The notes under the pieces: model-generated
Database searches by the model: none
The model's input: only the letters and a program-made list of their open reading frames with translations
What the model was told of the DNA's origin: nothing
Position numbers and translations under genes: made by a program
Shown here: positions 43,500 to 64,000 of the stretch, piece after piece
How positions within the stretch are numbered: position 1 is the first letter of the stretch
How the letters are laid out: each line of letters opens with the position of its first letter
Origin: Anaeramoeba ignava BMAN
Lineage: Eukaryota > Protista > Anaeramoebae
Direction: 5' to 3'
NCBI GenBank assembly: GCA_028826165.1
Contig: JAPDFW010000138.1
Span: 58,218-122,217, forward strand
DNA length: 64,000 bases

Positions 43500-43712
43500 A
43501 TTTAAAATTAAAATTAAAATTAAAATAAAAATTAAAATTAAAATTAAAATCAAAATTAAAATTAAAATTAAAATTAAAATCAAAATTAAAATTAAAATTA
43601 AAATTAAAATTAAAATTAAAATTAAAATTAAAATGAAAAATCAAAATTAAAATCAAAATTAAAATCAAAATTTTTTCATTTTTTCATTTTTTCATTTTTT
43701 TTCTTTTCAAAA

Positions 43713-45489
43713 ATGAATGATTGTTTATTTTTTGGTGAAAATAAAGACCAATTCTTATAAAAATGAACCAGATGAAATAACAAAACCAATTCAATTTAAA
43801 TTTGAAAATGAAAATGAAAATGAAAATGAAAAACAAATTAAACAAATTTCAACAGGAAATTATTCAATAATTTTCCTTTTTGAAAATGGAAAAGCAATAG
43901 AATATTTAAGATATCCAAATCCAAATCAAAATCCTTCAAAAATCCAAATTAAAGAAAATATTCAAAAAGTATCTGTTGGTTATGAAAATGAAGCTATTTT
44001 AACAATAGAAGGAAATGTATTTGCAAAAGGATATGATATTAATCCAAAAAATACAAATGAATTTATCAATATTTCATCATTAATTGAAGATACAAATGAT
44101 AGAATAATTCAAGATATTGTTTCTGGATACAATTCAATTTACTTATTAACTTCAAATCAAAATGTTTATGGAATTGGTTTAAATCAATATGGTCAACTTG
44201 GTTTTGATCCTAAAAAACTTCCAAAAACACGAAAACCAATTTTAATAATGAAAAATGTTTCTAAAATATTTTCAGGAAATTCTTCAAGACACGTTTTTCT
44301 TTTAAATTCAAATCAAGAATTATTTGGATGCGGAAATAATTATTCTGGTCAACTTGGATTAGGAGAATCAAGAAAAGAAGAAGAAATTCAAAAATTAACC
44401 AAAATCCAAAATATTCCAAAAGGTAAAATAATTGATATTCAATGTGGATATTTTCATTCAATAATGTTAATTGAAAATGAAAATCAAAATCCAAAAAGAA
44501 AACTTTATTCAACTGGAAGACATGGTTATAATGGACTTGGCAAAAATGAATATACTTATGAATTTACTGAAATGAAATCATCTTTATTTGAAAATGATGA
44601 TAATATTCTTGATTTTTCTTGTGGAAATGTTCATAATTTGATTTTAACTTCCAATTCAAAATTGATAGTATTTGGAAGAAATTATTTTGGTGAATTAGGA
44701 ACTGGAGATACAAATGAGCAATTGATTCCAATTCAAATTGAACTTCCTAAATTAAGATTTAATGAAAATATTTCTAATTATCATATTTCTTGTGGATATA
44801 ATAAATCATTTCTTTATTATTCTCCTTCTCTTTACTCTTTTTCCAATCTTGAAGAAGATTTGATAAAATTATTTGAAAGAAAAGAATTTTGCAATATTTC
44901 ATTTAAAACCAAAAATGGAGAAATAATTTCAGCTCATAAATTAATATTAAAATATAGATTAAATCAAAATGAAAATCAAATTGAAAAACTTCAAGAAATT
45001 ATTTCAAAAAAATCAATTAAAGAATCAAATCAAATATTTGAAATGATTTATTCAAACAATTCCAAAATAAATCCAAAATTATATTCTGAAATTAAAGAAA
45101 TTATAAATTCCAATGAAAAAATTGAAGAAACAATTAAAAGAATTTATTTAAATGAAAATGAAAATGAAAAAGATTTTATAATTGAAAGAAAAGAAAAACA
45201 ATATAAATTTCCAAAATTAATATTAATAATGAGAAGTGAATTATATCGAGGAATGTTTTTATCTGTAACTGAAGATAAATCTAATAAAGTTACAGATTAT
45301 AGTGAATTAAGTAATAAATCATTTCAAATATTTGAATATTGGATTTATTCAAATCAAATTAAAGAAGGAATTCAAATTACACAAGAAATAATTAATGAAA
45401 TAGAAATTGGAATTGATTATTTTCAATTAAATCAAACAAATCCAAATTTATTTGATTTATTAATTAACAAATTTAATAATCAAAATTAA
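43713..45489 (+). CDS. RCC1-BTB copy 4; homologous ATG at 43713, with 1-nt indel damage in the first ~20 codons
   Basis: ATGAATGATTGTTTATTTTTTGGT start as in paralogs; aataaagacc versus aatacaagacc puts this ATG out of frame with the body of the gene. Confidence 0.8.
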
Positions 45490-45729
45490 AATTAAAATTA
45501 AAATTTAAATTAAAATTAAAATTAAAATTAAAATTAAAATTAAAATTAAAATTAAAATTAAAATTAAAATCAAAAATTAAAATTAAAATTAAAATTAAAA
45601 TTAAAAATCAAAAATCAAAATTAAAATTAAAATTAAAATTAAAATTAAAATTTAAAATCAAAATTAAAATTAAAAATTCCAAAAAATATTTTTTCATTTT
45701 TTTATTTTTCATTTTTTTTCATTTCGAAA

Positions 45730-47609
45730 ATGAATGAAATTTTATTTTTTGGTTTAAATCAAAACCCAATTCTTATCAAAAATGAACCAAATTCAATAAC
45801 AAAACCAATTCAATTTAAATTTGAAAATGAAAATGAAAATGAAAATGAAAATGAAAATGAAAATGAAAATGAAAATGAAAATGAAAATGAAAATGAAAAT
45901 GAAAATGAAAATGAAAATGAAAATGAAAATGAAAATGAAAATGAAAAACAAATTAAACAAATTTCAACAGGAAATTATTCAATAATTTTCCTTTTTGAAA
46001 ATGGAAAAGCAATAGAATACTTAAGATATCCAAATCCAAATCCAAATCAAAATCCTTCAAAAATCCAAATTGAAGAAAATATTCAAAAAGTATCTGTTGG
46101 TTATGAAAATGAAGCTATTTTAACAAAAGAAAGAAATGTATTTGCCAAAGGATATGATATTAATCCAAAAAATACAAATGAATTTATCAATATTTCATCA
46201 TTAATTGAAGATACAAATGATAGAATAATTCAAGATATTGTTTCTGGATACAATTCAATTTACTTATTAACTTCAAATCAAAATGTTTATGGAATTGGTT
46301 TAAATCATTATGGTCAACTTGGTTTTGATTCTAAAAAACTTCCAAAAACACGAAAACCAATTTTAATGATGAAAAATGTTTCTAAAATATTTTCAGGAAA
46401 TTCTTCAAGACACGTTTTTCTTTTAAATTCAAATCAAGAATTATTTGGATGCGGATGGAATAAGCAGGGACAACTTGGATTAAGAAAATCAAGAAAACAA
46501 TATTGGAAAATCAAAAAATTAACCAAAATCCAAAATATTCCAAAAGGTAAAATAATTGATATTCAATGTGGATATTTTCATTCAATAATGTTAATTGAAA
46601 ATGAAAATCAAAATCCAAAAAGAAAACTTTATTCAACTGGAAGACATGGTTATAATGGACTTGGCAAAAATGAATATACTTATGAATTTACTGAAATGAA
46701 ATCATCTTTATTTGAAAATGATGATAATATTTTTGATTTTTCTGTTGGAAATGTTCATAATTTGATTTTAACTTCCAATTCAAAATTGATAGTATTTGGA
46801 AGAAATTATTTTGGTGAATTAGGAACTGGAGATACAAATGAGCAATTGATTCCAATTCAAATTGAACTTCCTAAATTAAGATTTAATGAAGATATTTCTA
46901 ATTATCATGTTCTTTGTGGAGATAATAAATCATTTCTTTATTATTCTCCTTTTCTTTACTCTTTTTCCAATCTTGAAGAAGATTTGATAAAATTATTTGA
47001 AAGAAAAGAATTCTGCAATATTTCATTTAAAACCAAAAATGGAGAAATAATTGAAGCTCATAAATTAATATTGAAATATAGATTAAAAGATGAAAATGAA
47101 ATTGAAAAACTTCAAGAAATTATTTCAAATAAATCAATTAAAGAATCAAATCAAATATTTGAAATGATTTATTCAAATAATTCCAAAATAAATCCAAAAT
47201 TATATTCTGAAATTAAAGAAATTATAAATTCAAATGAAAAAATTGAAGAAACAATTAAAAGAATTTATTTAAATGAAAATGAAAATGAAAATGAAAAAGA
47301 TTTTATAATTGAAAGAAAAGAAAAACAATATAAATTTCCCAAATTAATATTAATAATGAGAAGTGAATTATATCGAGGAATGTTTTTATCTGTAACCAAG
47401 ATAACTCTAATAAAGTTACAGATTATAGTGAATTAAGTAATAAATCATTTCAAATATTTGAATATTGGATTTATTCAAATCAAATTAAAGATGAAATTCA
47501 AATTACACAAGAAATTATTAAAGAAATTGAAATTGGAATTGATTATTTTCAATTAAATCAAACAAATCCAAATTTATTTGATTTATTAATTAATAAATTT
47601 AATAATTAA
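45730..47609 (+). CDS. RCC1-BTB copy 5; frameshift near 47395-47410
   Basis: Near-identical to copy 4 over most of the propeller; the conserved C-terminus continues in another frame to TAA at 47609. Confidence 0.8.
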
Positions 47610-48168
47610 AATTAAAATCAAAATTAAAATCAAAATCAAAATTAAAATTAAAATCAAAATTAAAATTATTAATTAACAAATTTAATAATTAAAATTAAAA
47701 TCAAAACCAAAATCAAAAATTAAAATTAAAAATTAAAATTAAAATTAAAATTAAAATCAAAATTTAAATTAAAATTAAAATTAAAATTAAAATTAAAATT
47801 AAAAATTAAATTTAAAATTAAAATCAAAATTAAAATCAAAATTAAAATTAAAATTAAAATCAAAATTAAAATTTAAATTAAAATATAAAAAAATAATTGA
47901 TTGAAAAATTGGGGAATTTAGTTAAAAAAAAATCCCCAATTAAAATAAAATAATTAAAATAAAATTAAAATTATAATAAATAAGTTTTTTTTATTGATTT
48001 TGCTTTTTTTGAATTTTTTTTTAAATAAACAAGAAAAAAAAAATTTTAATTTAAATTTTTAATTGATCTTTTTTATTTTTCATTTTTTTCCTTTTCCTTT
48101 TTTCTTTATAAACCCTTAATTAATTAATTAATTAATTAATAAATTAATAAAAGAAATTCTAATTTAAA

Positions 48169-50720
48169 ATGGGTGAACGTTGTGCAGTTTGTGGTAAAGC
48201 AATTTATATCGTTGATAGACTTGTCGTTGAAAAAATGGTTCTTCATAAAGGTTGTTTAAGGTAATTAATTAATACAAAAAAAAATAATATCCCTTTTTTT
48301 TTCCCAATCTTCTTTTTCTTTCCCAATTTAATATTTTCCCAATTTTAATATTTTATTTCAATTTAATATTTTATTTTAATTTAATATTTTATTTCAATTT
48401 AATATTTTATTTCAATTTAATATTTTATTTTAATTTAATATTTTATTTCAATTTAATATTTTATTTCAATTTAATATTTTATTTCAATTTAATATTTAAT
48501 TTCAATTTAATATTTTATTTTAATTTAATATTTTATTTCAATTTAATATTTTAATTTCAATTTAATATATTTTATTTTAATTTAATATTTTATTTCAATT
48601 TAATATTTTTATTTTAATTTAATATTTTTATTTTAATTTAATATTTTATTTCAATTTAATATTTTATTTTAATAATTTATTTATTTTATTTTTTCATTTT
48701 TAATATTTTTATTTCAATTTTTAATATTTTTATTTTTAATTTTTTATTTTCAATTTCAATTTTATATTTTATTTTAATTTAATATTTTATTTTAATTTAA
48801 TATTTTATTTCAATTTAATATTTTATTTTTCAATTTAATATTTTATTTTTAATTTTATTTTATTTTTAATTTAATATTTTATTTCAATTTAATATTTTTA
48901 TTTTTAATTTAATATTTATTTTTAATTTTATTTTAATTTAATATTTTATTTCAATTTAATATTTTATTTCAATTTAATATTTTATTTCAATTTAATATTT
49001 TATTTTAAATTTAATATTTTATTTTAATTTAATATTTTTATTTCAATTTAATATTTTTATTTTAATTTTAATATTTTAATATTTTAATTTAATATTTTTA
49101 TTTTCAATTTAATATTTTAATATTTAATTTTAATATTTTTATTTTAATTTAATATTTTAATTTCAATTTAATATTTTATTTCAATTTAATATTTTATTTT
49201 AAATTAATATTTTATTTTTAATTTTTAATAATATTTTATTTCAATTTAATATTTTATTTTTAATTTAATATTTTATTTTAATTTAATATTTTATTTCAAT
49301 TTAATATTTTATTTTTAATTTAATATTTTATTTTAATTTAATATTTTATTTTAATTTAATATTTTATTTCAATTTAATATTTTATTTTTTTATTTTAATT
49401 TAATATTTAATTTTAATTTAATATTTTATATTAATTTAATATTTTATTTCAAATTAATATTTTATTTTAATTTAATATTTTATTTTAATTTAATATTTTA
49501 ATTTCAATTTAATATTTAATTTTAATTTTATATTTTATTTTAATTTAATATTTTATTTCAATTTAATATTTTAATTTATTTTAGATGCCAAGTTTGTAAT
49601 ACAAGACTTAATTCTGGAAATTATAGATCCATTGATCAACAAATTTTTTGCCAAGCACATTACAAACAAACTTTCCTTGCTAAAGGTAATTTGAAATTAA
49701 AAATTAAAATTAAAATTAAAATTAATAATTAAAATTAAAATTAAATTTGAAATTAAAATTAATAATTAAAATTAAAATTAAAATTAAAATCAAAATTATA
49801 ATTAAAATTAAAATCAAAATTAAAATTAAATATTTTTCATATATTTATTATTAGGAAGTTTTTCTGCTTTCCGAGATACAAAATCAACACCAACTGTTAC
49901 TTATACGAAAAACGAATCAACTCTTGTTGGAAGAACAACCTCCACATCAAAATCACCAACACGAACATTTTCTACGTCTCAAAAAAAAACCAATTTATCA
50001 GATCGTATGAAGTTTTTTGAAGGTTTATCCGAAACAAAGGATGAACCAACTTTTGAAAAAAAACCAATAAAAAAACGAATTAAAAAACCAATTGAAAAAC
50101 CAATTGAAAAACCAGTTGAAAAACCAGTTGAAAAACCAATTGAAAAACCAATTCAAAAACCAATTCAAAAAACCGTTCAAAAACCAATTCCAAAACAAAA
50201 TCAAGTTGATACATCCAAATTAGAAGAAAAAGAAAAAGAAATTAACACACTTAAATCCAAGGAGAAAAGTTATTTGAAACAAATTGAAGATTTAAAGAAG
50301 AAATGCAATAATTTTGAAAAGGAAATTGAAGATTATAAAGAAGAAAATAACAATTTAAAAAAAGATGTTGAAGAACTTGAAAAGGAAGTAGAACAACTTC
50401 GAATGACACAAAACGTTAGAAGTCAAAGTCGAAGTAGAAGTCCAAGTCCAATTAGAAGTAGAAGTCAAAGTCCAGTTAGAAGTCAAAGTCGAAGTAGAAG
50501 CCAAAGTCCAATTAGAAGTAGAAGTCAAAGCCGAAGTCGAAGTCAAAGTCCAGTTAGAAGTCAAAGTCCAGTTAGAAGCCAAAGTCAAAGTAGAAGCAGA
50601 AGTTATAGTAGAAGTCCAGTTAGAAGTCAAAGTCCAGTTAGAAGTGGAAGTAGAAGCAGAAGTTATAGTAGAAGTAGAAGTCAAAGTCCAGACAATATTT
50701 CACATTCAAATAGTGATTAA
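48169..50720 (+). CDS. LIM-domain protein with KPIE repeats, coiled coil and RS/SP-repeat tail; exons 48169-48260, 49585-49685, 49855-50720
   Basis: Spliced LIM domain [55 protein letters not shown]; intron phases are consistent through to ORF 50007-50720. Confidence 0.88.
48340..49575. repeat. (AATTTAATATTTTATTTY)n about 18-mer satellite in LIM intron 1
   Basis: Degenerate period-18 repeat. Confidence 0.9.
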
Positions 50721-51003
50721 TTTCATTTCATTTCATTTCATTTTTAATTTCTTTTTTAATTCACTTCATTTACATTCAATTTGTTCCACTTTTTTTCTTT
50801 TCAAAATAATTTGGAACAACAACAAAAAAAAAGCAAAAAAAAGTTTTTTCTTCTTTTCAAAATAATTTGGAACAACAAAGAAAAATAAAAAAAAAAGGAA
50901 AGTTTTTTAATTTTAATTTTAATTTTAATTTAAATTTTAATTTTAATTTTAATTTTTAATTTTTTAATAACAAGCATGATTTGAAATTCTTCTTTGTTTT
51001 TAT

Positions 51004-52033
51004 TTAAAAATCAGTTAATAATTTTTGATCCAAAAAATCTCTCAAATCACAAATAATTTCTTGTTCAAAACCAAAATCCCAAATTTCATCGTAAGTAAGA
51101 GTATTTTCATATTGACCACCAAAAAGAAAGAAATGAGAACGAGAATAAGCACAACCAACACTTCCGAAACGAGCAGAAGGAAAAAGAGAAGGATTTTGAG
51201 GGAAATCATATAAAAACCATTCTTTTTTTTTCAAGTCAAAATAACGCAATTTATTAGAATATCTGTCTCGCCAAGAAAAACCGCCAAAACAAACAACATA
51301 TTGATTTTCATAGATGACAGAAACATGACCCCCAAATGCCGGCAAATCAAAAATAGGGTGAATTTTGCTCCATTCAAAAAGTGTTTAAGTTGAATAAATA
51401 AATTTCACAATTTTCAATTTTGGATTCATCAAGACCCCCAACTATCATTAGATTATCTTCGTAAATATGGCAAGTGTGAGAAGATCTTGCTTTTGGAATT
51501 TCGCCAATTGATGGGATTTCTTCCCATTTTTTTTGCAGAGTGTTGAATCTCCAGAGATCGTTTTTGCGCGATCCTTCATTAGAAAATCCTCCAAAAAGAT
51601 AAATAAATCCATTGTGATAAATTGCGGAATGCGAATATCTTCCGCTTGGTTTCTTTTCATGACCCGCAAATTCAATTTTAGTCCATTGATTTAAATTTGT
51701 ATCAAATTCCCACAAATCATCATAATATTCATTTTCCATATTTCCTCCAAAAATCCATATTTTATTCTTGAACCCTGTCATTGAGTGTGCAGAACGAATA
51801 CTGGGTTGTTTATTTTGATCCGGTTTGATTTGTTCCCATTTGTTATTTTGGAGATCAAATGAGAACAACTGGTTTGATTCTTGTGTTGGATTTAATTTAT
51901 TTCCTCCAAAAATATAAATTTTATGTTGATCTGAATCGAAAAATATTCCCGATTTTGCAACTTCCATTGGTTTTTCTTCTGTAATTGGAATTAACTGTTT
52001 CCATCCAATAAATTTTTTATTTGATTTTTTCAT
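51004..52033 (-). pseudogene. Kelch-repeat protein with a frameshift near 51376 and a truncated BTB start (pseudogene or sequencing error)
   Basis: Kelch repeats (IFGG..NDLW, PSGRYSHSA). TTT TGA ATG GAG reads TTT GAA TGG AGC after removing one T. Ends CDLRDFLDQKLLTDF*, the usual lead-in to a BTB domain. Confidence 0.65.
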
Positions 52034-52140
52034 TTAAAAATAAAAAAAAAGAAAAAAATAAAAAATAATTTTTTTTTCCTTTTTATTTTTCATTTTTTCA
52101 TTTTAAACAAAAACAAAAACAAAAAAAACAAAAAGGAAAA

Positions 52141-54231
52141 ATGGACAATAATAATAATAAAAATCAAAATCAAAATCAAAATCAAAATCAAAATCAAAAT
52201 CAAAATCAAAATCAAATTCAAAAAAATTTTATTGAAAAATACCAAAAAGCTATAAAATTCCATTCTTCTTTCCAATATCAATCTTCCCTTTTATTATTTC
52301 AAGAAATTCTTCAAGAAAATATTTTAGAAAATGAATTACTATTTGAAATTATGATCAAATTATTAGAATCAAATCTGAAACTCAATAATTTAGGAAATTC
52401 AAGAAATTTAATTAAACAAATTCAAGAAAAATTTCCAGAATCAAAAATTCAAGAGTTTTATCAAATACACTTTGAAAAAAAAGAGAATTTTGAAAAAATT
52501 AAAATCATTTTAAATTCATTAGAAGTTAAATTTGCAATTTTATGCTGTCAATTTTATCTCCAAATTTCCGATTTTACACAATTTGAAAATCATATGAAAA
52601 TTTTACAAAGAAATGAAAATGAAAATCAAAATAATGAAAATCAAAATAATGAAAATCAAAATCAAAATCAAAATTTGAATGAAAATCAAAATGAAAATTT
52701 GGATGAAAAACAATTTTCAATTAAATTAACAAAAGAACAACAAATTCAAGTTCAACTTCTCCAAATTAAGTTTGAAATTTATCAAGAAAACTTTGAAAAT
52801 GCAATCAAGATTCTAACAGACATTTTGGAAACAAACAAAAAATCAAAGACAACAAACCAATATCTTTCAGTTATTTGTGAAAATAATCTTGGATTAATTT
52901 ATTTACAACTTAAAAAACCAGCAAATTCACTTGTTCATTTGAAGCGAGCCTTTTTGGAAAATCAAACAATGATTAAGAAAATCAAATCACAGACTCAATC
53001 ACATTCAAAAAAGAACGAAAAGGTTGTGAAATTGAGTCTCCAACAACAAGTGAATTTGGAGAAATACCAAGAAATTAACTACGAAATATCTTATAATATC
53101 GGACTTGCTTTATTGATCCAAAACTCGCCCACTAAAGCCTTTGAGGCTTTCCATCTCTCGTTGAAACACTTCTATAACAACCCGAGAATTTGGATTCGTT
53201 TGACAGAATCTATTGTTTATGTTCTATTGGGTTTGAAAAGCAAAGATCGAATCAACTCATCAAACAGCAACATTGAGAAAATTATTGGAAAAGGAAGAAA
53301 CAGAAGAATCATCATGAAAACAAAGGATTCTTTGCTCAATCAGAACAGATATAATGCCAAACTCCTCAAAAATTCAATTGTTCCAGATTCTCAAAAGAAG
53401 AAGAAAAGAAAATCAAAAAAATCAGCGGAACAAAATCAAGACGAATCTTTAAAGCAAATTTCTCTTTTTTCCGCAAATCAATTCTGCAAAAATGCATTGA
53501 TATTAATCTCAAAAAATCTTGAGAAATGGAACCAATTATTCCTTCAATTTCCTCCACAAACAAATCCAAAAACAAACAGTCTTGATCAAGAAAACAACCC
53601 AAAAGAAAACGAATCAAAAGAAGACGAAAACTTCCTCATTTTCATTAAAAAAACCATGTATTCATTTTTAACCGAAAGAACATCAACAAATTTGCTTCTC
53701 AGTTTTATCTGCCTTTGTCAAGAAGATACAATTATTTCTTTGCAAATTTGCGATGATCTTTTAAAAAGAGAAAGCGAACTTTCTTCAATTCAATATTTCC
53801 TTGCATATCTTTATTACACAGAATCATTTTGTCTGCTTGGATTTCCTGATGAAGCTGAATGCAAGTGGTCAAGTGAAATTTATGAAAAATTCCAAACCAA
53901 AATCAAAGAAAATCTTGATAAAGTTCATCTTGAAATGGATTATCCTGAATTCATTGAAAATATCCCAAACAATAACAACACTCTTAAAACAGTTCAATTC
54001 ATTTTTCTTCTTAATTTATCAACCATTTTGTTAATGAAGGGAAATGTTCGTGAAGCTGAAAATTCTATTAAACAATGTCTTGAAATTTCTCCCAAAGATT
54101 CAAAAGTTTTCCTTACTCTTGCTTACATTCAAATCAAAAAGAAAAATTTCAAATTTGCTTCTCATATTTTAATTACAAACTCTTTACATCCTGATCAAAT
54201 TGAAAATCCTGAAACAGAAAAAGAAATTTAA
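52141..54231 (+). CDS. CNOT10: CCR4-NOT subunit 10
   Basis: TPR-like protein with ENNLGLIYLQLKK..HLKRA, YEISYNIGLALL..PTKAFEAF..YNNPRIWIRLTES, IIGKGRNRRII and LAYLYYTESF. Confidence 0.85.
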   Translation: MDNNNNKNQNQNQNQNQNQNQNQNQIQKNFIEKYQKAIKFHSSFQYQSSLLLFQEILQENILENELLFEIMIKLLESNLKLNNLGNSRNLIKQIQEKFPESKIQEFYQIHFEKKENFEKIKIILNSLEVKFAILCCQFYLQISDFTQFENHMKILQRNENENQNNENQNNENQNQNQNLNENQNENLDEKQFSIKLTKEQQIQVQLLQIKFEIYQENFENAIKILTDILETNKKSKTTNQYLSVICENNLGLIYLQLKKPANSLVHLKRAFLENQTMIKKIKSQTQSHSKKNEKVVKLSLQQQVNLEKYQEINYEISYNIGLALLIQNSPTKAFEAFHLSLKHFYNNPRIWIRLTESIVYVLLGLKSKDRINSSNSNIEKIIGKGRNRRIIMKTKDSLLNQNRYNAKLLKNSIVPDSQKKKKRKSKKSAEQNQDESLKQISLFSANQFCKNALILISKNLEKWNQLFLQFPPQTNPKTNSLDQENNPKENESKEDENFLIFIKKTMYSFLTERTSTNLLLSFICLCQEDTIISLQICDDLLKRESELSSIQYFLAYLYYTESFCLLGFPDEAECKWSSEIYEKFQTKIKENLDKVHLEMDYPEFIENIPNNNNTLKTVQFIFLLNLSTILLMKGNVREAENSIKQCLEISPKDSKVFLTLAYIQIKKKNFKFASHILITNSLHPDQIENPETEKEI

Positions 54232-54334
54232 CTGAAAGAGAAAATTAATTGGAAGAAGAAGAAAAAGAAAAAAACGAAAATTTATTTAATTTGATTAATT
54301 TTCTTTTCTTTTCCAAATAAAAAGCAAAAAAGAA

Positions 54335-54367
<33 letters not shown>

Positions 54368-54371
54368 TTTC

Positions 54372-56915
54372 CTATTTTTCAATTGATTTTTTAATCCATT
54401 CAAATCCTTCTTTTATTCCTTCTCCTTTAATTGCGCTACAAGGTTTGACAATCCAATGATGAGATGTTAATGTTCTTAAAGATAGTTTCTCAACAATTTC
54501 TTTTGGTTTACAAGCTGTTGGAAGTTCTTGTTTATTAGCAAAAATTAAAACTGGAAGATTTTTAGATTCTTCATGCGAAAGCAATCCTAATAATTTTGTT
54601 TTAACTTCATCAAATCTAAATTGGTCTGTGGAATCAATAACAAAAATAATAGCATCAGCTCCAGGTAAATAATGATTCCATATATAATAAATCATTGAAC
54701 CTTTTTAAACAATCAAGAAAGAAAGGAAAAAAAAAATTTTTTTTTTTTGATTAATTTGAATTGATTAAAAAAAAAAGCAAAAAATTGATTTGCCTGCATT
54801 AATTCAAATTTATTCAAATTATTTTATTTAATTTTATTTAATTTAAATTATTTAATTCAAATTATTTTATTTAATTCAAAATTATTCAAATTATTTTATT
54901 TAATTCAAATTAAATTACCTCCTCCAATATCCCAAATTTCAAATTTTTGATTGGAAATTGTAACTGTTTCAACATTAAATCCAACTGTTGGAATTGTTGT
55001 TAAAACTGAATCAGGTAAAGCTAATCGATAAAGAATTGATGTTTTTCCACTTGCATCTAATCCAAAAATAATTGTTTTAATTAATTTTTTCTTTTTCATC
55101 TTCTTTTTATTCTTCTTTTTCTTCAGTTTTGGATCAACATTATCATTCTCATTAAATTGAACAGGAAATCCTTCTAAAAACCCATTTTCTTCAAAATACT
55201 TTTTCTATAAACCTTTTCCAGCCATTTTGATTTGATTTTACACTTTGAATAATTTTCATTTCCTTTAAACTTGGTTTTCTAAGATGATCTTGCTCATAAA
55301 TTGGAGCCCAAACCCAATCATGACTTGCCATATAATTCATCTCCTTTGAACTACAAGCAACTTTGCAAAGATCTTTTTTTGATAAAAACGAAAAAATAAT
55401 CGCCATAACTTCAAAAGGAATTTCTGAGAAATTTCCTGATGATTGGTCGAAATCCATTTCTTCACTTTTCAGTTTCTGGATATCATCACCAAAATTAAAA
55501 TTGAGACTTCCTTTTTTCCTTGTTAAAATACAAGAATGTAACCTAGAATTAAAATTTGAATTAAAATTTGAATTAAAATTTGAATTAAAATTAAAATTAG
55601 AAAAAAAAAATGGAATAACACGTGTAAAAGGTGAAAAAAAAAATTTTTTTTTCTTTTTCTTTCTTTTTCTTCTAATTTACCATCCACAAGAAATTCCAAT
55701 AGCAAATTCATCTTCAGATAAGTGAACCCTTGCGGGAACAAGTTGGACTTCTTTGTTTGTATTTATGCCAAGTTGTCCATATTTGTTCCCTCCAGCAGAA
55801 AAAACCTCACCTTGCGAAGTGCTCATCATAATAAAACTTTGGCCGTAACCACCACCAGCAGCAATATTGACAAAATCCAGATCTGGAGGAAGACAACACT
55901 CAACAAAAACTAATTGGTCGTCGGTTGATGTGACTCCAACAGCACTTCCTTTTCCACAAACATATATTTTTTGGTATTCCGAGATGATGATTGTGTGTTC
56001 ATCACCGCATGAAATCTCTCTAATTTTGCCAATAAATGGCGGGAAATAGGGTTGGGTCAGCTCTTTTCTGTGGATTTTATCATTGAGACCAAGTTGTCCA
56101 TGCGTGTTCTTTCCACAACAATATATTTCGTTGTTTTTTGTAATTATAAATAAATGGTGTCCACCAGCTGAAATGGTTTCAATATTTTCAATTTTTGTGT
56201 GAACCAATTCAGGTTTTTCTCTGTCATTTAAATCACCATGAGCTAATTGACCATATGAGTTATTTCCCCATGTCACTAAATGATTTCTTTGAATAAATTT
56301 TTTTTTTTCCAATTAAAATTCCAAAATTCCAAAATTTAAAAATTAAAAATTAAACTACTCTTCATCAATAGCAACAAAAAAATTAGAACCACAACATATT
56401 TTACTAATTTTCCATTTGGTTGCTGAACTGAAATCAATTTTTTGAGTTTGAATCTTCTTTTTAATCCAAACAGGAAGTGATAAATCAACCAAAAAAACCT
56501 CTCCATTGATTAAAATTATAAACGAAAAAGCTCCACTTGAAATTTGGGAAATTATTCTTCCTGAAAAATCTGAAATGACAACAAAAAGTTTTCTTCTTTC
56601 CTTCAAAATTTTCTGTTGCTGTTTTTTTGGCAACGAATCTATTTTTCCGTTTTGATTCGTTTGATTCTTTTTTTCCTTCTCAATTATAAAGGATTTTTGA
56701 GTTTGAGTTGAAATTCCCCATAAAATTATTTTTCCTGTTGATGTTGATAAAACTGTATGAGTTGATCCACTTGATATGAATTGGATTTGTTCTTCTCTAA
56801 TAAATGGCATCAATGTTTCTTTTAAAGAAATTGGATCTCTTACAATTAAACTTGGATTTTCTTTAATTGCTAATTGATATGTTTGATTACTTCCTGAAAC
56901 AAAAAGGTTTGTCAT
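54372..56915 (-). CDS. RCC1-repeat + F-box + Arf-family GTPase fusion; introns 56287-56358, 55543-55680, 54701-54918; one extra base near 55193-55205
   Basis: Splicing gives IDEE/NHLVTWG and ISCGW/LHSCILT, then in frame the F-box [29 protein letters not shown], then Arf motifs [37 protein letters not shown]. Confidence 0.82.
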
Positions 56916-56994
56916 TTAAAAAAAAATGAAATGAAAAAAATGAAAAAAATGAAAAAAAATGAATTCATTTTTTTCTTTTTAAATTTTTAATAAA
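56916..56994. promoter_or_regulatory. 79-bp divergent promoter with back-to-back TCATTTT elements
   Basis: Repeated AAAATGA then AAAATGAATTCATTTT between head-to-head ATGs. Confidence 0.6.
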
Positions 56995-58380
56995 ATGGAA
57001 AATTATTTAAATTTAGAAAAACTTTCAAATGATTTAAAAAATTTATTTCAAAATCAAAATCAAAATGAAAATCAAAAAGAAAGCTATTTTGATTTTGAAA
57101 TAATTTGTGAACAAAATAAAACTTCATTTAAAACTCATAAATCAATTCTTTCTTCAAGAAGTCAATATTTTAAATCTCTTTTCAAATCTAAAATGAAAGA
57201 ATATCAAGAAAATAAATTAATTCTAAAAGATGTTTCAAGTTCAATTCTATTTTCAATTTTGAATTATTTTTATTCAGGAAAAATTGAAATTAATTTAGAA
57301 AATGCAATCGAAATTTTAATTTTTTCATCAAAATATTTAATTGATGAATTAATTGAAATTTCTTCAAATTTTATCAAAAACAATTTCCAATTTGAAACTA
57401 TTGTTGATGTTCTTAAATTATCTGAATCAATGAATTTCAATCAATTATTAGATTCTTGTTATAAATTTATTTCTAAAAATTTTGATAAATTTATCAAAAC
57501 TTCATTTTTTCTTGAACTTGAAGAAAATCATTTAAATTCAATATTAATAAATGATGGAATTGAAATAAATGAATTTGAACTTTTCCAATCAATAATAAAA
57601 TGGGGAAAATACAAATCAAATATTAATCAAATTTCAAATGTTATTGAAAAAATAAGATTTATTGATTTTCCAAATGAAAAACTTGGAGATATTTTGAAAG
57701 AAGATTTAATTCCAAATCAAATTTCACAAAAATTAATCCAATTCCAAAAACTTCAAAATCAAAATGACGGAAATGAACTAGATCAATTTATTAAAAAAGA
57801 AAATCAAAATTCATTAATTTTCAAAACAAGAATTAAATTGTCAGAAATTATTCAAGAAAATAAAGATATTAATAAATTAAAAGAATGGATAAATGATAAT
57901 GAATTCTTTTCCAAAATGAAAAAAGGATTTTCAGCAAAAAGAGATGGATTTGATTCCCAAAAATGGCACAAAAGTTGTGATGATAAAGGAAAAACGTTGG
58001 TTATTATCAAAACAAAAGATAATTTTATTTTTGGAGGATTTACTCAAGTTGGATTTAAACCTTCAAAAAGAGGAATATGGATTCAAGATGAAAATGCATT
58101 TATTTTTTCATTCAGAAATGATAAGAATGATAGAAAACCTGAAAAATTTCCAATCATAGAAGAAAAGAAAGAAGATGCAATTTATTCTCGTGAAAATTTA
58201 GGTCCACTTTTCTCAAATGCAATTTATTTAAATTCAGATTTACAACCTGGCTATTCAAATTTTGGATACACTTATAATCTTCCTGATGGAATTGAATATA
58301 GAACAGATGAAGCCCGAAATTATTTAGCTGGTTCTTATAGTGAATGGGTTGTTGATGAACTTGAGACTTTTTTCATTTAA
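56995..58380 (+). CDS. BTB-BACK-TLDc protein
   Basis: BTB FDFEII..FKTHKSILSSRSQYFKSLF; BACK FLELEENHL..ELFQSIIKW; TLDc AKRDGFDSQKWHKSCDDKGKTLVIIKT..FGGFT..ELETF. Confidence 0.92.
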   Translation: MENYLNLEKLSNDLKNLFQNQNQNENQKESYFDFEIICEQNKTSFKTHKSILSSRSQYFKSLFKSKMKEYQENKLILKDVSSSILFSILNYFYSGKIEINLENAIEILIFSSKYLIDELIEISSNFIKNNFQFETIVDVLKLSESMNFNQLLDSCYKFISKNFDKFIKTSFFLELEENHLNSILINDGIEINEFELFQSIIKWGKYKSNINQISNVIEKIRFIDFPNEKLGDILKEDLIPNQISQKLIQFQKLQNQNDGNELDQFIKKENQNSLIFKTRIKLSEIIQENKDINKLKEWINDNEFFSKMKKGFSAKRDGFDSQKWHKSCDDKGKTLVIIKTKDNFIFGGFTQVGFKPSKRGIWIQDENAFIFSFRNDKNDRKPEKFPIIEEKKEDAIYSRENLGPLFSNAIYLNSDLQPGYSNFGYTYNLPDGIEYRTDEARNYLAGSYSEWVVDELETFFI

Positions 58381-58461
58381 AAATCAAAATCAAAAAAATA
58401 CTTTTTGTTTAAAAAATCTATCTTGTTTTATTGTTTTAAAAAAAAAAAGAATTTATTTGGA

Positions 58462-61400
58462 TTATAAAAAAGATGAAGAAATCATTTCCATCCATTGTCG
58501 AAGAGCATCTGCAAGAATTTCAGGAATAGATTTAATCTCTCTCAAAATAATATAATAAGGAAAGGGAAAATTATCGAGATAAGGAGAACAAGTTAATTTC
58601 CCGTTTGGATAAGAAATAGTTTGCAATTGTAAAATAGAATTAGAATTTTTGGGATGGTCGATAATAAGAAAAACAAATAATTGCTGTTGAGAATAAGCTT
58701 CAATAATAAATTTTCGGATTTCTTCTCTATTACTAAATCTTCCATCTGAAATAACAAAAACAATCTGGAGATTCTCAGAAAAATTGATTGATTGATTTCG
58801 TGAATGCGATAGCATTTGAACAACAAAAGAAACCATTCCTGAAACATCAGTTTGCTTGTCTTTAAATGCTAATTGGGATAAAATTGAGCCTCCAATATTG
58901 TCAGAAAAGGGCTTATCTAAAGGATGAAGCAATTCTGTTTTTTCTCCAAAACTAACAACTGAAATTTCTCCAACTTCAAGAAGTGACAATGCTTTTGTGA
59001 TTAAACATAATGCTTCGCATGCCAATTCGCCTGAATTGTTATCGATCATACTTTCAGAATTATCAATTGCAAAAACAACTTGATATTGTCTTTTACTTGG
59101 TTTTGTTCTTCTCATCCAAATTTTATCCTTTTTGAAATTACTTGCAATGTATGGAATCACTTTTTTCATGTTGATTCGCTTTCCTGTTCTATAATCTCCT
59201 TTAAGACGTGTTTGCCAAACTGGGTTCCAAAATCAATCTTAATTGCTCGCTTAATTCCTGAGAGAATTCATGTGTTTTGGCTTCTAATTTTTGCCATTTT
59301 TGTTCATATTCATTTATCATTGCTTGATTCTCACTTATTTTTCTATAATTCATCTCTTGGTTTTCTCGAATGTTTATTAAATCTTCTTCTGTCATTTCTT
59401 TCTGTTCTTCTTTTTCTTCTTTTATTTGTTGTTCCTCCTTCATTTTATTTCCTGAATTAAACCATTTTCTTTCTGTAACAACTAAGTTTTCTTTTTCTTT
59501 TTCTTTTTCTTCATTATTATCTTTATTATCATCTTCATTGTTTTCTTTTTCTTGATCTTTTTCTTGATCTTTTTGATCTTCTCTATTTCTCTCGTTATTT
59601 TGATCAAATCTAAGTTTTTGTATTTTTTTTTGAAATTCAATTATTTTTTCATCTTCATTATTTAATTCGTTTTCATTTTCGTTTTCATTTTCATTTTGAT
59701 TTTCATTTTCATTTTCATTTTCATTTTCATTTTCATTTTGATTTTGATTTTCATTTTCATTTTCATTTGTAGGTTTTGGAATAGTTTCCATTTGATTTTC
59801 TAATGCATTTCCTAATGTTTGTGCATCTTCATCTTCGTTTTCATCTTGAATATATTGAAATTCTTCTGATTGATTTTTTTGTTCATTTTCATTTTCATTT
59901 TCATTTTCTTGTTCATTTTCATTTTCTTTTTGGAAATCATGAACATTTAATCTTTCATACCAATGTTTAAGTACATCTCCAATATCTCGATAAGGATTTG
60001 GATTTGATTTTTCCCAATCATTTTGATTTTCAAATTCATTTTCTAATTGGTTTTCATTTTCCATTTTCATCATTTGATCTTTTTCATTTATTGATTGTTG
60101 CATTTTTTCATTTTTATCAAATTGATCTTGATTAATTGATTCTTCATTTTGTTTTTGCATTTCTTTCTCTTTTTCTTCATCCTTTTCAATTGATCCATCT
60201 TGGAAATCTCCCTTTCCATCTTTTGTTCCAAATGGTTTTTCTTCTTTATTTTCTTTTGTTCCTTCATTTTCCTCTCTTGCTTTATAATTTTCATCTAAAT
60301 CAGCAACAAGTGGATCTTCTTGTTGTTTTCTTTCATCTTCATCTTCATTTTCATCCTCTTTTTCATCATTTTCCAAATCGGATATTTTTTCGATTTTTTC
60401 ATCATTTTCATCAAAAGATTCAGGATAATCATCACTTAATGATTCATCTGATTGATGTTGATCAAGTGGATCATCTTCTAATTTGTTTTCTTCTTCTATT
60501 GAATTTTCATCTTCTGCATTTTGACCTTTTTCGTCTTTGTCAAGTTCCATATCTTCAGGAAGTTCGATATCTGAAATTTCTGGTTCTGCTTCAATTCCAT
60601 AATTTGGATCGTATTGTTCTCTATTAATATTTTCTTCATTTTCCATTTCATTTTCATTTTCATCTTCATTTTCATTTGCATTTTCATTTTCATCTTCTTT
60701 TTCATTTGCATTTTCATTTTCATTTTCATTTTCATTGTTTTTGTTTTTGTTTTTATCTTTTGGTTCTTGTTCTTCTTCTTTTTTTGCTGCAATTTCAATA
60801 TCTTCATTTGGAGGATTTTGAATTCCTGAATTATCTTCAATATTTTCTTGTTTTTCTTCATCTTCTTTTTCTTTTTCATCATCAGAATCCCAATATTTTT
60901 CATCAATAACATCATCAGGATTTGTTTCTCCCATTTGTTCATCCATTTCTTTTTCATTGTCTTCATCTTCATCTTCATCATCTTCATCATTTTCATTTTC
61001 ATTTTTCTTTTGATCATCTTTAAGATCATCAATTTCTCCTTGGAAATCATTTTCCATTTCATAAGGTTTTGCTTGATCATCTTCTTGATTTTCTTCTTCT
61101 TTGGTTTTTTCTTCTTGTTTTTGTTCTTCTTGATATTTTTCAAGTTGATCATCATTCTCAATTTTTTCTGATCCATCATGAACACCTTGACCATCACTCA
61201 TTCCAAATCCATTATTATTATCAAACGTAGTTTCTTCGGATTCGTTTCCAATTCCATCTCCTGCTTCTTTGCTTTTTTCTTCACAAAATCCTCTTTCGTA
61301 TAAAGAGTTGAAAAGATTTGATAATATATTTTCAAGTTTGGATACTTTATGATGAAATGAAATGTACTGTTCCAAAATTTGTTTGTATGTTTGCTTGAAT

Positions 61401-64000
61401 ATTCTTAAAATGGATTCAAATTCTGTTATTAAATAAAATATAATTTTTTCCATTTGTTGTTTCAAGTTGTTTTCTTGTGATTCAATATATGAAATTTCTG
61501 CAAATTCTTGAATAAATTGGAAGAATTTTTTAGTTGAGTAAATGACTTGATCAACAAGAAAGCTTTTGATTAATTTGGAAAATAAATTTTGAGATTTTGT
61601 AATTTTAAAGTTTGGGTTCAAATATTCTTCAATTTCAATTTCACTTTCATTCAAATTTTCATTCTCTTCTTTTTTAAATTCGTCTATTAAACCAAAAACA
61701 TTTTGAATTGAAACCATCATTTTTAACTACTGAAATTTCATAAAATTGAACTAATTTATTTCCAATTTCAAATAAATCTTCTGTTGATTTCTTTGGTTCA
61801 TTTTCATTTTCAATTGTTTCAATAACAGCCTTATTTTCTGTGTATTTATCTATAAAAGAGAGAAGAGGAATCTTAAATAGAAACCAAGTTGTTTCTTTTT
61901 GAGAAAGAATATCAACAATTTTCTTTTGAATTTCATCTAAAATAGCCCAATTTTGTTTTGCAAATTCAAAATGCTCATTGAGAAATAAACCATCAATATT
62001 AATTTCCTTTTCTTTTCAGTTGATTTTCATTTTGTTCTAAAAGTAAATCAACAAATTCAGTTGTTTTATCAAGCGAATTTCCTCTTTCAATCTGTTTGAC
62101 TTTTGATGAGAATATTTTCATTTCAAAAAGTATTCGATGCAATTCATTAAACAATTTGTTTTGGGTTAAAAGTGATTCTTTTGTAATTTTCTGGGATGGG
62201 AATAAATGAATATGGGAATTGATCTTTTGAATTTTGAGAAGAAATAATTGACGAAGAAAATTGCAATAAATCATTCATTTCAGATTGTTTGTCTAATGCC
62301 TTCCCAATCTCTTTTCTTTGTGAAGTCATTATATGGAGTAAATGCTCAATGAATCCTCGAGATTTGATAATTTCTGCATTGCTTAAATCTCTACTTTTTC
62401 TTGATTCTGATTTAACCCTTGATATTATAACTTTCAAAACACACTTGAAAAATATTGATTTAATTTTTCTGGGAATATTTCTCCTGAAGAAACAGGTTTT
62501 TCAATGAAAAAATAATTGGATGATTCTTGAAATGCAAAAATTTTGGGGTTTGTTTTCAAATCAATTTGTTGGAGATATTTCATCAAATCAGAAAATGCTC
62601 TTCTTTTGACTTGTTTGATCTCGCTTCTATTTCTTAATTCTGTTGTTGTATCAATAATTGTTGTTGAAAGTGTATCCAATGTTGTAATTGCAATTTCAAT
62701 CATTTTATGTACATCTTTGAGGATTTCTTTGCAATGAGATTTCATTTTTTGATCAATTTTAGAAAGACGTGAGTTTATTGAACGTGGTTCTGAAAGTTTA
62801 AATATATCCATAATTTTTTGTTCAATTCCTTCTTTTTTAGCAATATCTTCTCGAAGAATAACTACAATTGGTTTAATTTCTTTTTCAATTTCAATTTCTT
62901 TTTCTTTTTCTTTTTCTTTTTCTTTTGGTTTTTCTTCACTTTCAGGATAAACAATTTTAGCTTCAATTTGTTTCAAAATATTAAGAACAGGCGATTTCAA
63001 AATATTTTCAAATTGAATTGACAAAACGATTCAATTTTTATGTATTTGAAGTACTTTATGATGTAATTGAATATATCTTGTTTCTTCCATTTTAACTTGT
63101 ACCTAAATCGTTAAGTTGCTTTTGTATGGGTTGTTTGATTTTTCTATATATTCTTCAACGTCTGGTAAGAATTGTAAATAATACCAATATAAATTGAGAA
63201 GTAAATTTGCTGTTTTCTGTCTTGTTTTTTGGATATAATTTGTTGGATTGTAATCCAATTTGCATTCTGTTTGTATTTGGTTATGTATTGATAAGATGAT
63301 TTCCAATCTTGTTTTGAATTCACCAACATTTGAAGTTTGGATGAATTTTTCTAATTCAAGGAAAACATTTTGTAAAAATTGTTCATCATCTTGAAATTCA
63401 TCATTTTCATCATTTTCATCATTTTTATCATTTTCATCATTTTTATCATTTTTATCATTTTCATCATTTTTATCATTTTCATCATTTTTATCATTTTTAT
63501 CATTTTTATCATTTTTATCATTTTTATCATTTTTATCATTTTTATCATTTTTATCATTTTTATCATTTTTATCATTTTTATTTTCATTTTCAATCCGTTT
63601 TGGATTCATTAACCTGAAAAGTGTCAAAAACCATTTCTGTGCTGAAAACTCAAATTCTTTCCTTTTCTTCCAAAAAACAGATGACCATGTTTCTAACTCT
63701 AATTTTCTCCATCTTGAAATTAATCTGATAATATCAGAAATATGTTCTGAAAGAGAAACATCATTTGATGAATATAATTCCCATTCTTCAACAGATTTCA
63801 TTAATACCTCAAGACCTGTCAAAAATCTCATTAAAGGACTTGAAATGGGAAAATCCAAAATCTTTTCACAAATTTCTTTCATACGAAGTAAAGTTGAATG
63901 ACCTGACCATTTCTCTAATAATTCTTGGATTTTACTCTTGAATTTCTCAAGTGGTTCTTGTATTAAAGTGTTTCTAATATCTTGGCTCTGTGTAAATATC
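58462..64000 (-). CDS. MDN1: Midasin (MDN1/Rea1) C-terminal part: linker, D/E-rich region and MIDAS domain; at least 6 apparent frameshifts
   Basis: SSPLMRFLTGLE..WRKLELETW; GFC..GMSDGQG; ELSEQLRLILEP..(LKGDYRTGKRIN)MKKVIPYIAS..DKIWMRRTKPSKRQYQV..DNSESM..YLDNFPFPYY..LADALRQW. Confidence 0.95.

What the first reader, a model, noticed from the sequence alone, without database searches (positions are those of the whole stretch)
54372..56915. Hidden single gene fusing RCC1 repeats, an F-box and an Arf GTPase
Seen: five separate ORFs join through three GT-AG introns whose phases complete conserved motifs (GA|A AAT CAT; TG|G TTA CAT giving CGWLHS; G|GT TCA). One extra base in an A or T run separates the F-box from an open Lys-rich linker leading into Arf. 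Established: F-boxes bind Skp1 in SCF ligases, RCC1-like domains often bind small GTPases, and TRIM23/ARD1 is a precedent for an E3-Arf fusion. Inference: an SCF adaptor with a built-in GTPase switch, and with the propeller N-terminal to the F-box, the reverse of the usual order. I do not recognise this three-domain architecture.
Basis: partly seen in the sequence, partly recalled or inferred. Interest (0 to 1): 0.8.

Follow-up and report, generated by a model that had tools for sequence, protein, structure and literature searches.

The report
RCC1–F-box–Arf fusion gene, already annotated
This is a real, spliced gene of the anaerobic amoeba Anaeramoeba ignava joining an RCC1-type propeller, an F-box and an Arf-type GTPase that lacks its catalytic glutamine; it belongs to a multi-copy family that is already annotated and catalogued but never studied, and the frame break in this copy is probably a sequencing error.

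Summary
On the minus strand, five ORFs join through three GT-AG introns (56358-56287, 55680-55543, 54918-54701). They encode an RCC1-like propeller, an F-box and an Arf domain (Pfam).

The fusion is real. Four paralogous loci in the same genome carry propeller, F-box and Arf P-loop in one uninterrupted 400-425 aa frame.

The frame break is not "one extra base". The window lacks two A's, in A-runs 55214-55217 and 55200-55204, relative to a 98% identical copy on contig C59, which reads straight through. A transcriptome ORF matches the intact frame 100% across this site. Neighbouring genes show reciprocal 1-nt homopolymer differences between the copies, and the assembly is Nanopore-based. An assembly error is therefore likelier than a true break.

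The gene is not hidden. GenBank holds it as KAJ5066665.1 (681 aa, with an artificial intron over the break) and KAJ5077364.1 (705 aa, C59).

Relatives with the same architecture occur in Pelomyxa, Papus, Flectonema and Arcella. A 2021 ARF survey lists "Kelch repeats, RCC, F-box" for Thecamonas.

No member keeps the switch-II glutamine.

The SCF-adaptor reading is plausible but untested. This scan had already noted paralogues on other pieces of this genome. Interest is moderate.

The parts
56359..56915 (-). Exon 1. ATG at 56915. Encodes the N-terminal, more divergent blades of the RCC1-like propeller, with a low-complexity insert.
   Evidence: ORF. Pfam RLD/RCC1 hits. Identical to residues 1-185 of the public models P0010/P0121.
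56287..56358 (-). Intron 1 (72 nt, GT...AG, phase 2).
   Evidence: Sequence. The junction gives ...IDE-E-NHLVTWG, as in P0121. Paralogues align without a gap here.
55681..56286 (-). Exon 2. Encodes the C-terminal blades of the RCC1-like propeller.
   Evidence: Pfam RCC1 2e-31 and RLD 2.4e-36. The model's propeller matches HERC2 RLD2 and HERC1 RLD3 at TM about 0.8.
55543..55680 (-). Intron 2 (138 nt, GT...AG, phase 2).
   Evidence: The junction restores CGW|LHS. Paralogues L024, L026, L027 and L028 have no intron here and read CGWIHSCF or CGWTHSCF in one frame.
54919..55542 (-). Exon 3. It is a single exon in the intact copy. It encodes the F-box, a helical linker, a Lys-rich linker and the first half of the Arf domain. 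In the window two missing A's split it into two frames.
   Evidence: The C59 copy has one 253-aa open frame over this stretch. Alignment.
55296..55430 (-). F-box motif.
   Evidence: Pfam F-box-like PF12937 (E 5e-9, 36 bits against a cut-off of 24.3) and F-box PF00646 (27 bits against 20.5). Confirmed on the full-length protein.
55214..55217 (-). First frame-break site. The A-run is A4 here and A5 in the C59 copy.
   Evidence: It lies directly after the family-invariant W-K motif.
55200..55204 (-). Second frame-break site. The A-run is A5 here and A6 in the C59 copy.
55191..55193 (-). TGA that ends the shifted F-box frame in the window. It is out of frame in the intact copy.
   Evidence: The transcript ORF P0122 reads through this place in the other frame.
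55174..55243 (-). The 70-nt 'intron' used by public model KAJ5066665.1 to step over the break. It is most likely an annotation workaround, not a real intron.
   Evidence: P0010 reads ...KEMKIIQ|KGFPVQ.... The same stretch is coding in P0121 and in transcript ORF P0122. It holds the conserved W-K motif.
55085..55129 (-). Lys-rich, predicted disordered linker directly before the G domain.
   Evidence: Translation. pLDDT is below 50 for residues 517-538 of P0121.
55040..55063 (-). Arf P-loop, GLDASGKT.
   Evidence: Translation. Aligned to ARF6.
54701..54918 (-). Intron 3 (218 nt, GT...AG, phase 1). It interrupts the codon at the switch-II glutamine position, which reads Gly here.
   Evidence: The Pfam Arf profile runs 7-67 before it and 73-173 after it. 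The junction [13 protein letters not shown] aligns without a gap to ARF6 WDVGGQDKIRPLW.
54372..54700 (-). Exon 4, the last exon. It encodes the second half of the Arf domain, with NKQE at 54525-54536, the CSA motif, and stop TAG at 54372-54374.
   Evidence: ORF. Pfam Arf 3.9e-31. PDB ARF6 E 2e-48 over the whole domain.

Best explanation
Gene structure (shown). This is one protein-coding gene of Anaeramoeba ignava on the minus strand, spanning 56915-54372, with four true exons and three introns. It encodes a protein of about 705 aa.

Domains (shown):
- Residues about 1-397 form a seven-bladed RCC1-like propeller.
- Residues about 426-470 are an F-box, followed by helices.
- Residues about 517-538 are a disordered Lys-rich linker.
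- Residues about 542-704 are an Arf-type G domain. It has no N-terminal myristoylated helix. Gly stands in place of the switch-II catalytic Gln, and NKQE in place of NKQD.

Family (shown). It is one of about nine loci of an RLD-F-box-Arf family in this genome. The family is also found in distant protists.

Frame break (inferred, about 0.7-0.75). The break in the window, two A-run undercalls, is most likely a residual Nanopore homopolymer error. If not, this duplicate is truly broken.

Mechanism (inferred, about 0.5-0.6):
- The F-box docks on Skp1-Cul1, so the protein acts as an SCF substrate receptor.
- The propeller is the substrate- or partner-binding face.
- The Arf domain binds GTP but cannot hydrolyse it in the usual way. 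It would act as a nucleotide-dependent targeting or regulatory module, comparable to the ARF domain of TRIM23.
- The polybasic linker may help membrane contact.
For: - Domains: Pfam on each exon and on the full-length public protein (RLD 201 bits, Arf 187 bits, F-box-like 33 bits, all above their cut-offs).
- Fold: AlphaFold model with mean pLDDT 78. The propeller matches HERC2 and HERC1 RLDs at TM about 0.8. The Arf part matches ARF6 at TM 0.90.
- Fusion: uninterrupted 400-425 aa frames span propeller, F-box and Arf P-loop at L024, L026, L027 and L028. All seven other loci, the C59 copy included, keep the same exon order.
- Intact copy: the C59 copy has a continuous 253-aa frame, and the public 705-aa model KAJ5077364.1 covers it.
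- Transcript: ORF P0122 is 100% identical to P0121 residues 417-541, across the break.
- Selection: all 4 exon substitutions between the two copies are synonymous, across 692 codons.
- Error context: reciprocal 1-nt homopolymer differences break other genes in one copy or the other. The assembly used Nanopore R9.4 reads, Racon, Nanopolish and Pilon (PMC11550330).
- Relatives: homologues with the same architecture in Pelomyxa, Papus, Flectonema, Arcella and environmental contigs cover 92-98% of the F-box+Arf region.
- Switch II: no family member has Gln there.
- SCF machinery: Skp1 and several cullins are encoded in the genome.
Against: - Error versus true frameshift is therefore unresolved for this copy.
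- The transcript ORF stops matching at the poly-Lys stretch, where its tail looks chimeric. Continuity of the mRNA into the G domain is thus not shown directly for this gene.
- A search for short transcript ORFs of the Arf half found none.
- Skp1 binding, substrate binding, nucleotide binding and localisation are all untested.
- pTM 0.55 gives no confident inter-domain arrangement.
- NKQE and the divergent switch II ([10 protein letters not shown]) could mean weakened nucleotide binding in this particular paralogue.
Confidence: 0.8

Rival explanations
1. The frameshift is real in the DNA of this copy. C139 would then carry a broken duplicate or allele. It would yield a truncated RCC1-F-box protein of about 504 aa ending at TGA 55193-55191, with the Arf part untranslated or decaying. 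The C59 copy would be the functional one.
For: - The window sequence as given has the stop.
- The two copies are truly distinct DNA, with about 1% substitutions and structural differences such as a 1.4-kb gene present only in C139.
- The assembly was Illumina-polished.
Against: - Both differences are single-base undercalls in A-runs.
- The same kind of difference breaks other genes reciprocally in either copy.
- Downstream Arf exons show no other damage, and all 4 exon substitutions between copies are synonymous.
- Short-read polishing is weak where two copies are 98% alike.
Confidence: 0.2
2. The public model KAJ5066665.1 is right. A fourth intron of 70 nt (55243-55174) is spliced out and the protein is 681 aa.
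For: The stretch has GT...AG ends and restores the frame.
Against: - The stretch is coding in the C59 model and in the transcriptome ORF.
- It contains the W-K motif that is invariant across the family.
- No paralogue has an intron there.
Confidence: 0.04
3. These are two independent genes by design: an RCC1-F-box gene, and a small helix-less Arf starting at ATG 55099 with its own promoter in the 91-nt gap.
For: An in-frame ATG at 55099 precedes the G domain.
Against: - The 91 nt have coding-like composition and are open in the Arf frame.
- The transcript ORF reads from the F-box through this gap.
- Every paralogue and every foreign homologue is a fusion.
Confidence: 0.03
4. A functional alternative, not exclusive of the main reading. 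The propeller is not a substrate receptor. It acts in cis on the Arf domain as an exchange or release factor or a nucleotide-state sensor, so the F-box recruits a self-regulated GTPase module to SCF.
For: - RCC1 is the exchange factor for Ran.
- The HERC1 RLDs are reported to bind ARF1 and to release its GDP (review PMC6692442).
- The best structural matches of the propeller are HERC RLDs.
- Propeller and Arf are kept together across distant taxa.
Against: - pTM 0.55 gives no confident contact between the domains.
- The flexible linkers are long.
- No biochemical data exist.
Confidence: 0.2

Closest known systems
Lineage-specific multidomain ARF-family proteins with ubiquitin-ligase adaptor domains (Vargova et al. 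2021, PMC8358228; e.g. Thecamonas TtrArlX1, listed as 'Kelch repeats, RCC, F-box')
   Same: - An Arf-type G domain at the C terminus of a protein that also has RCC1 repeats and an F-box.
- The environmental homologue P0141 has Kelch, RCC1, F-box and Arf. It aligns over 93% of the F-box-Arf region.
   Different: - The survey only tabulates the architecture and leaves the protein 'unannotated'.
- It describes no family, no shared loss of the catalytic Gln and no function.
- Anaeramoeba was not in that data set.
- I did not compare directly with the Thecamonas sequence.
TRIM23 / ARD1 (E3 ligase with a C-terminal ARF domain)
   Same: - An E3-ligase module is joined to a C-terminal Arf-type domain that lacks a myristoylated N terminus.
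- TRIM23 proteins are among the sequence hits of the Arf part.
   Different: - TRIM23 has RING, B-boxes and a coiled coil, and is itself the ligase. This protein has an F-box, an adaptor for a cullin ligase, and no RING or B-box.
- TRIM23 keeps the switch-II Gln. This family does not.
FBXO24 and RCBTB proteins (RCC1 repeats combined with a cullin-adaptor domain)
   Same: An RCC1-like propeller is paired with an F-box (FBXO24, PMC10932545) or a BTB domain. The BTB pairing also occurs in the array in this same window.
   Different: - By my own knowledge, not checked here, FBXO24 has the F-box N-terminal to the RCC1 repeats. Here the order is reversed.
- Neither FBXO24 nor the RCBTB proteins have a GTPase domain.
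HERC1 / HERC2 (HECT ligases with RCC1-like domains)
   Same: - The propeller is structurally closest to HERC RLDs, at TM about 0.8.
- The HERC1 RLDs are reported to bind ARF1 and release its nucleotide. This links an RLD, ARF and ubiquitin ligation.
   Different: - HERCs are giant HECT enzymes that act on ARF in trans.
- Here the Arf domain is in the same chain, and the ligase link is an F-box.
ARF6 / ARF1 (canonical Arfs)
   Same: - The G domain matches ARF6 at E 2e-48 with about 45-48% identity.
- The P-loop, TTIPT switch I, WDxGG and the CSA motif are present.
   Different: - There is no Gly2 or amphipathic helix.
- Gln is replaced by Gly at switch II, and NKQD by NKQE.
- The rest of switch II is divergent in this paralogue.

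Membership tests
F-box proteins (SCF substrate receptors) | F-box motif of about 40-50 residues scoring above the Pfam gathering thresholds | tested here: met
   PF12937 scores 36.2 bits (cut-off 24.3) and PF00646 27.4 bits (cut-off 20.5) on exon 3. On full-length P0121 they score 33 and 24 bits.
F-box proteins (SCF substrate receptors) | Physical binding to Skp1 | not testable with these tools
   Only the partners' presence was checked: one Skp1 locus and several cullin loci in the genome.
F-box proteins (SCF substrate receptors) | Usual layout: F-box N-terminal, substrate-binding repeat domain C-terminal | tested here: not met
   The propeller (residues 1-397) precedes the F-box (426-470). 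This layout is common but not a strict requirement of the family.
ARF family GTPases | Arf profile match plus the G1 P-loop GxxxxGK[ST] and the switch-I Thr | tested here: met
   PF00025 scores 186.7 bits (cut-off 22.3). GLDASGKT and TTIPTVG align to ARF6.
ARF family GTPases | G3 motif DxxGQ with the catalytic glutamine | tested here: not met
   The motif reads WDIGGG. All 12 family members have G, S, A, E or P at this position, never Q.
ARF family GTPases | G4 motif NKxD (guanine specificity) | tested here: not met
   It reads NKQE in this gene. Several foreign members keep NKQD.
ARF family GTPases | N-terminal amphipathic helix with a myristoylated Gly2 | tested here: not met
   The G domain is internal and is preceded by a Lys-rich disordered linker.
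RCC1-like domain (RLD) proteins | Seven-bladed RCC1-type propeller | tested here: met
   PF25390 scores 201 bits (cut-off 150). Foldseek gives TM 0.80-0.82 to HERC2 RLD2 and HERC1 RLD3 and 0.74-0.78 to RCC1.
RCC1-like domain (RLD) proteins | Guanine-nucleotide exchange activity on a small GTPase | not testable with these tools
   This needs biochemistry. Many RLDs have no such activity.
TRIM23 / ARD1 | RING finger, B-boxes and a coiled coil N-terminal to the ARF domain | tested here: not met
   No RING or B-box family appears among the Pfam hits of P0121. The protein is an analogue, not a member.
RLD-F-box-Arf group (as tabulated for Thecamonas in PMC8358228) | RCC1 repeats, F-box and Arf domain in one chain, alignable across the F-box-to-Arf region | tested here: met
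   Members from Pelomyxa, Papus, Flectonema, Arcella and two environmental contigs align over 92-98% of residues 405-705. Direct comparison with the Thecamonas protein was not done.
RLD-F-box-Arf group (as tabulated for Thecamonas in PMC8358228) | Single evolutionary origin of the group | tested here: inconclusive
   The Arf-domain tree does not recover one clade (5 changes). Strongly supported branches do not exclude one origin.

The most novel reading that the evidence does not exclude
The RLD-F-box-Arf proteins would form one ancient, still unnamed lineage of the ARF family. It would have arisen once, before Metamonada, Discoba, Amoebozoa and apusomonads diverged, or spread among them by gene transfer. 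Its defining traits would be the loss of the catalytic glutamine and a fixed propeller-F-box-Arf order. It would work as a GTP-state-gated receptor of SCF ubiquitin ligases, expanded to about nine loci in Anaeramoeba along with its enlarged membrane-trafficking machinery.
Probability: 0.3. Interest if true: 0.6.

Novelty: new member of a known kind. Interest (0 to 1): 0.35.

Why it matters
- If the SCF-receptor reading holds, this family adds a second kind of link between an Arf-type GTPase and ubiquitin ligation, besides TRIM23. It does so through a cullin adaptor, and with a G domain that cannot hydrolyse GTP in the usual way.
- Keeping an RCC1-like propeller and an Arf domain in one chain, across very distant protists, suggests a functional RLD-ARF connection. 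So far that connection is known only from HERC1.
- For genome annotation, KAJ5066665.1 contains an artificial intron that hides a probable homopolymer error. That intron removes 24 codons, including a conserved motif.
- Beyond that, the gene is an ordinary, already deposited member of an expanded family.

Tried and rejected
**Reads and transcripts**
No read-level check of the A-runs or introns was therefore possible.
Scripts split the window around them.
- Loci that the genome search fetched by itself over that stretch (L013, L031, L032) were never used as queries.
- The C59 locus used as a local alignment subject includes C59's own upstream flank.
- The look-up of sequencing runs gave one run of unknown kind and no RNA run.

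**Exact-product look-ups (all blank)**
- The neighbouring 461-aa gene.
- The window's 88-aa shifted ORF.
- The intact 184-aa ORF of C59.
- These blanks say nothing about which form exists in independent assemblies.

**Other searches and analyses**
- The third word search, for short transcript ORFs of the Arf C-terminal exon, found nothing.
- The Arf-domain tree was too poorly resolved to show or exclude one origin.
- The full-length AlphaFold model had pTM 0.55, so no inference on propeller-Arf docking was drawn.
- The large representative-protein search was not used, because no claim here rests on an absence of relatives.
Searches went exon by exon by reference. Full-length work used the public proteins P0121 and P0010 that the tools returned.

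**Readings rejected**
- Programmed ribosomal frameshifting was considered and rejected. The sister copy and the transcript are simply in frame.
Full report
**What is in the window**

The region is very AT-rich (about 23-27% GC). The gene lies on the minus strand.

Reading the minus strand gives three GT...AG introns:
- intron 1, 56358-56287 (72 nt), junction GA|A AAT CAT;
- intron 2, 55680-55543 (138 nt), junction TG|G TTA CAT;
- intron 3, 54918-54701 (218 nt), junction G|GT TCA.

Searched exon by exon by reference, Pfam gives the following:
- RCC1/RLD in the first two pieces;
- F-box-like (E 5e-9) and F-box in the third;
- Arf profile positions 7-67 in the fourth and 73-173 in the fifth.

The Arf profile therefore runs on across intron 3. 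Full-length analyses used the public proteins that the tools returned.

**The fusion is real**

The window is contig C139:58218-122217 of a 42.8-Mb assembly. Searching this genome with the F-box and Arf exons found both parts side by side at further loci.

After fetching seven of these loci, the five exon translations hit all of them in the same order and on the same strand. At L024, L026, L027 and L028 a single uninterrupted open frame of 400-425 aa runs from RCC1 repeats through CGWIHSCF (CGWTHSCF in L028) and an F-box into GLDASGKT (GLDNSGRT in L028) and TTIPTVG/TTIPTIG. This is direct sequence proof of the three-domain chain. It also confirms the intron-2 junction.

Counting C115, there are about nine such loci.

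**The frame break**

Contig C59 carries a copy 98.3% identical over 2.7 kb. It differs from the window by a few substitutions, by intron microsatellite indels and by two extra A's:
- GGAAAAGG in the window against GGAAAAAGG in C59 (window run 55214-55217);
- GAAAAAG in the window against GAAAAAAG in C59 (window run 55200-55204).

With them C59 has one 253-aa frame from the F-box into the Arf domain, reading ...[17 protein letters not shown].... The paralogues read GWKKAYF at this place, and W and K are invariant in the wider family. The C59 frame is therefore the conserved one.

Two bases are missing. The last seven residues before the TGA are already out of frame.

**Error or true break?**

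Evidence for a sequencing error:
- Window 47.9-64 kb is collinear with C59:97.5-113.5 kb at 97-98% identity.
- In the neighbouring genes, single-base homopolymer differences break the frame in one copy or the other. At 51376 the window is broken. At the places matching 52462 and 60266, C59 carries the extra base, and its frames there are split.
- All four exon substitutions in the target gene are synonymous.
- The published assembly used Nanopore R9.4 reads, ABruijn, Racon, Nanopolish and two rounds of Pilon (PMC11550330). Short-read polishing is weak where two copies are 98% alike.
- A transcriptome ORF of A. ignava in EukProt (P0122) is 100% identical to residues 417-541 of the intact protein, right across both A-runs and the TGA.

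Limits of that evidence:
- The tail of P0122 after the poly-Lys stretch matches dispersed repeats elsewhere, so the contig is probably chimeric. It does not prove continuity into the G domain.
No RNA run was found.

I rate an assembly error at about 0.7-0.75 and a truly broken duplicate at about 0.2.

**It is already annotated**

The word search named the organism as Anaeramoeba ignava. It returned the window's own product as P0010, which is KAJ5066665.1, 681 aa, named 'adp-ribosylation factor f-related'. The C59 product is P0121, which is KAJ5077364.1, 705 aa. Both carry RCC1, F-box-like and Arf Pfam domains.

P0010 reads ...KEMKIIQ|KGFPVQ.... The predictor stepped over the break with a 70-nt GT...AG 'intron' at 55243-55174. 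That stretch is coding in P0121 and in the transcript ORF, so the intron is an artefact.

**Relatives and literature**

Proteins with the same order and 92-98% coverage of the F-box-to-Arf region occur in:
- Pelomyxa schiedti (two proteins);
- Papus ankaliazontas;
- Flectonema neradi;
- Arcella intermedia;
- two environmental contigs, one with added Kelch repeats.

The Papus, Flectonema and Arcella entries are complete ORFs from transcriptome assemblies, so fusion mRNAs exist in those species.

Vargova et al. 2021 (PMC8358228) state that some ARF-family proteins carry BTB or F-box domains, 'similar to TRIM23'. Their Supplementary Table 1 lists the Thecamonas protein TtrArlX1 as 'Kelch repeats, RCC, F-box' and leaves it unannotated.

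The Anaeramoeba genome paper does not discuss this family.

An Arf-domain tree neither shows nor excludes a single origin.

Other agents of this scan have reported paralogues on other pieces of this genome, with the same conclusions. I reached mine before reading theirs.

**The protein**

The model of P0121 has mean pLDDT 78 and pTM 0.55. It shows:
- a complete propeller at residues 1-397, with best matches HERC2 RLD2 and HERC1 RLD3 (TM about 0.8), followed by UVR8 and RCC1;
- F-box helices at residues 431-507;
- a disordered Lys-rich linker at residues 517-538;
- an Arf fold, TM 0.90 to ARF6.

By sequence the G domain is closest to ARF6 (E 2e-48). It keeps the P-loop, TTIPT, WDxGG and CSA. 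It has Gly where ARF6 has the catalytic Gln, NKQE where ARF6 has NKQD, and no N-terminal helix.

No member of the family has Gln at that place. They have G, S, A, E or P instead.

**How it most likely works**

Shown: the domain set, the presence of one Skp1 locus and several cullins, and the family-wide loss of the hydrolytic residue.

Inferred:
- The F-box recruits the protein to Skp1-Cul1.
- The propeller presents a substrate or partner.
- The Arf domain is a GTP-binding, hydrolysis-poor module that tunes localisation or activity, by analogy with TRIM23.
- Alternatively, the propeller acts on the Arf domain in cis. This fits the reported HERC1 RLD-ARF1 link (PMC6692442). The model gives no support for a fixed contact.

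**Verdict**

It is not hidden and not a new architecture. The function is untested. I class it as a new member of a known kind, of moderate interest.

Noticed in passing
window 56995-58380 (+): A single-exon BTB-BACK-TLDc gene (461 aa) starts only 79 bp from the ATG of the fusion gene, in divergent orientation. It belongs to a family with well over 60 full-length copies at 68-79% identity across the genome. It is absent from the matching place of the C59 copy.
   Followed up: partly
window 47864-64000 versus G000:C59:97466-113465: The end of contig C139 and an internal part of C59 are collinear copies at 97-98% identity. Single-base homopolymer differences break different genes in each copy: the window is broken at 51376, and C59 at the sites matching 52462 and 60266. 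This looks like residual long-read error in a duplicated or heterozygous region.
   Followed up: partly
window 37245-47980; G000:C59:80570-97582: A tandem array of RCC1-BTB genes, already noted by the scan as s1-689421. Its units match seven or more units on C59 at 80-94% identity. Their propellers are only about 30% identical to the propeller of the fusion gene.
   Followed up: partly
window 55174-55243 (-): Public model KAJ5066665.1 removes this coding stretch as an intron, which hides the frame break. 24 codons are lost, including the conserved W-K motif.
   Followed up: yes
P0122 residues about 104-144; e.g. G000:C126:613937-614041, C2:262313-262435, C67:284708-284809: The tail of the transcriptome ORF after the poly-Lys stretch matches at least eight dispersed loci at 58-83% identity. 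The transcript contig is probably chimeric at an A-rich stretch, or it ends in a repeated element.
   Followed up: no
window 52141-54231 (+): A convergent neighbour encodes a 696-aa TPR-repeat protein with an N-terminal Asn/Gln repeat. Its stop lies 140 bp from the stop of the fusion gene. The C59 copy of it is split into two frames.
   Followed up: partly
window 54335-54372: A (CTTT)n microsatellite lies directly after the stop codon. C59 has one more unit.
   Followed up: no
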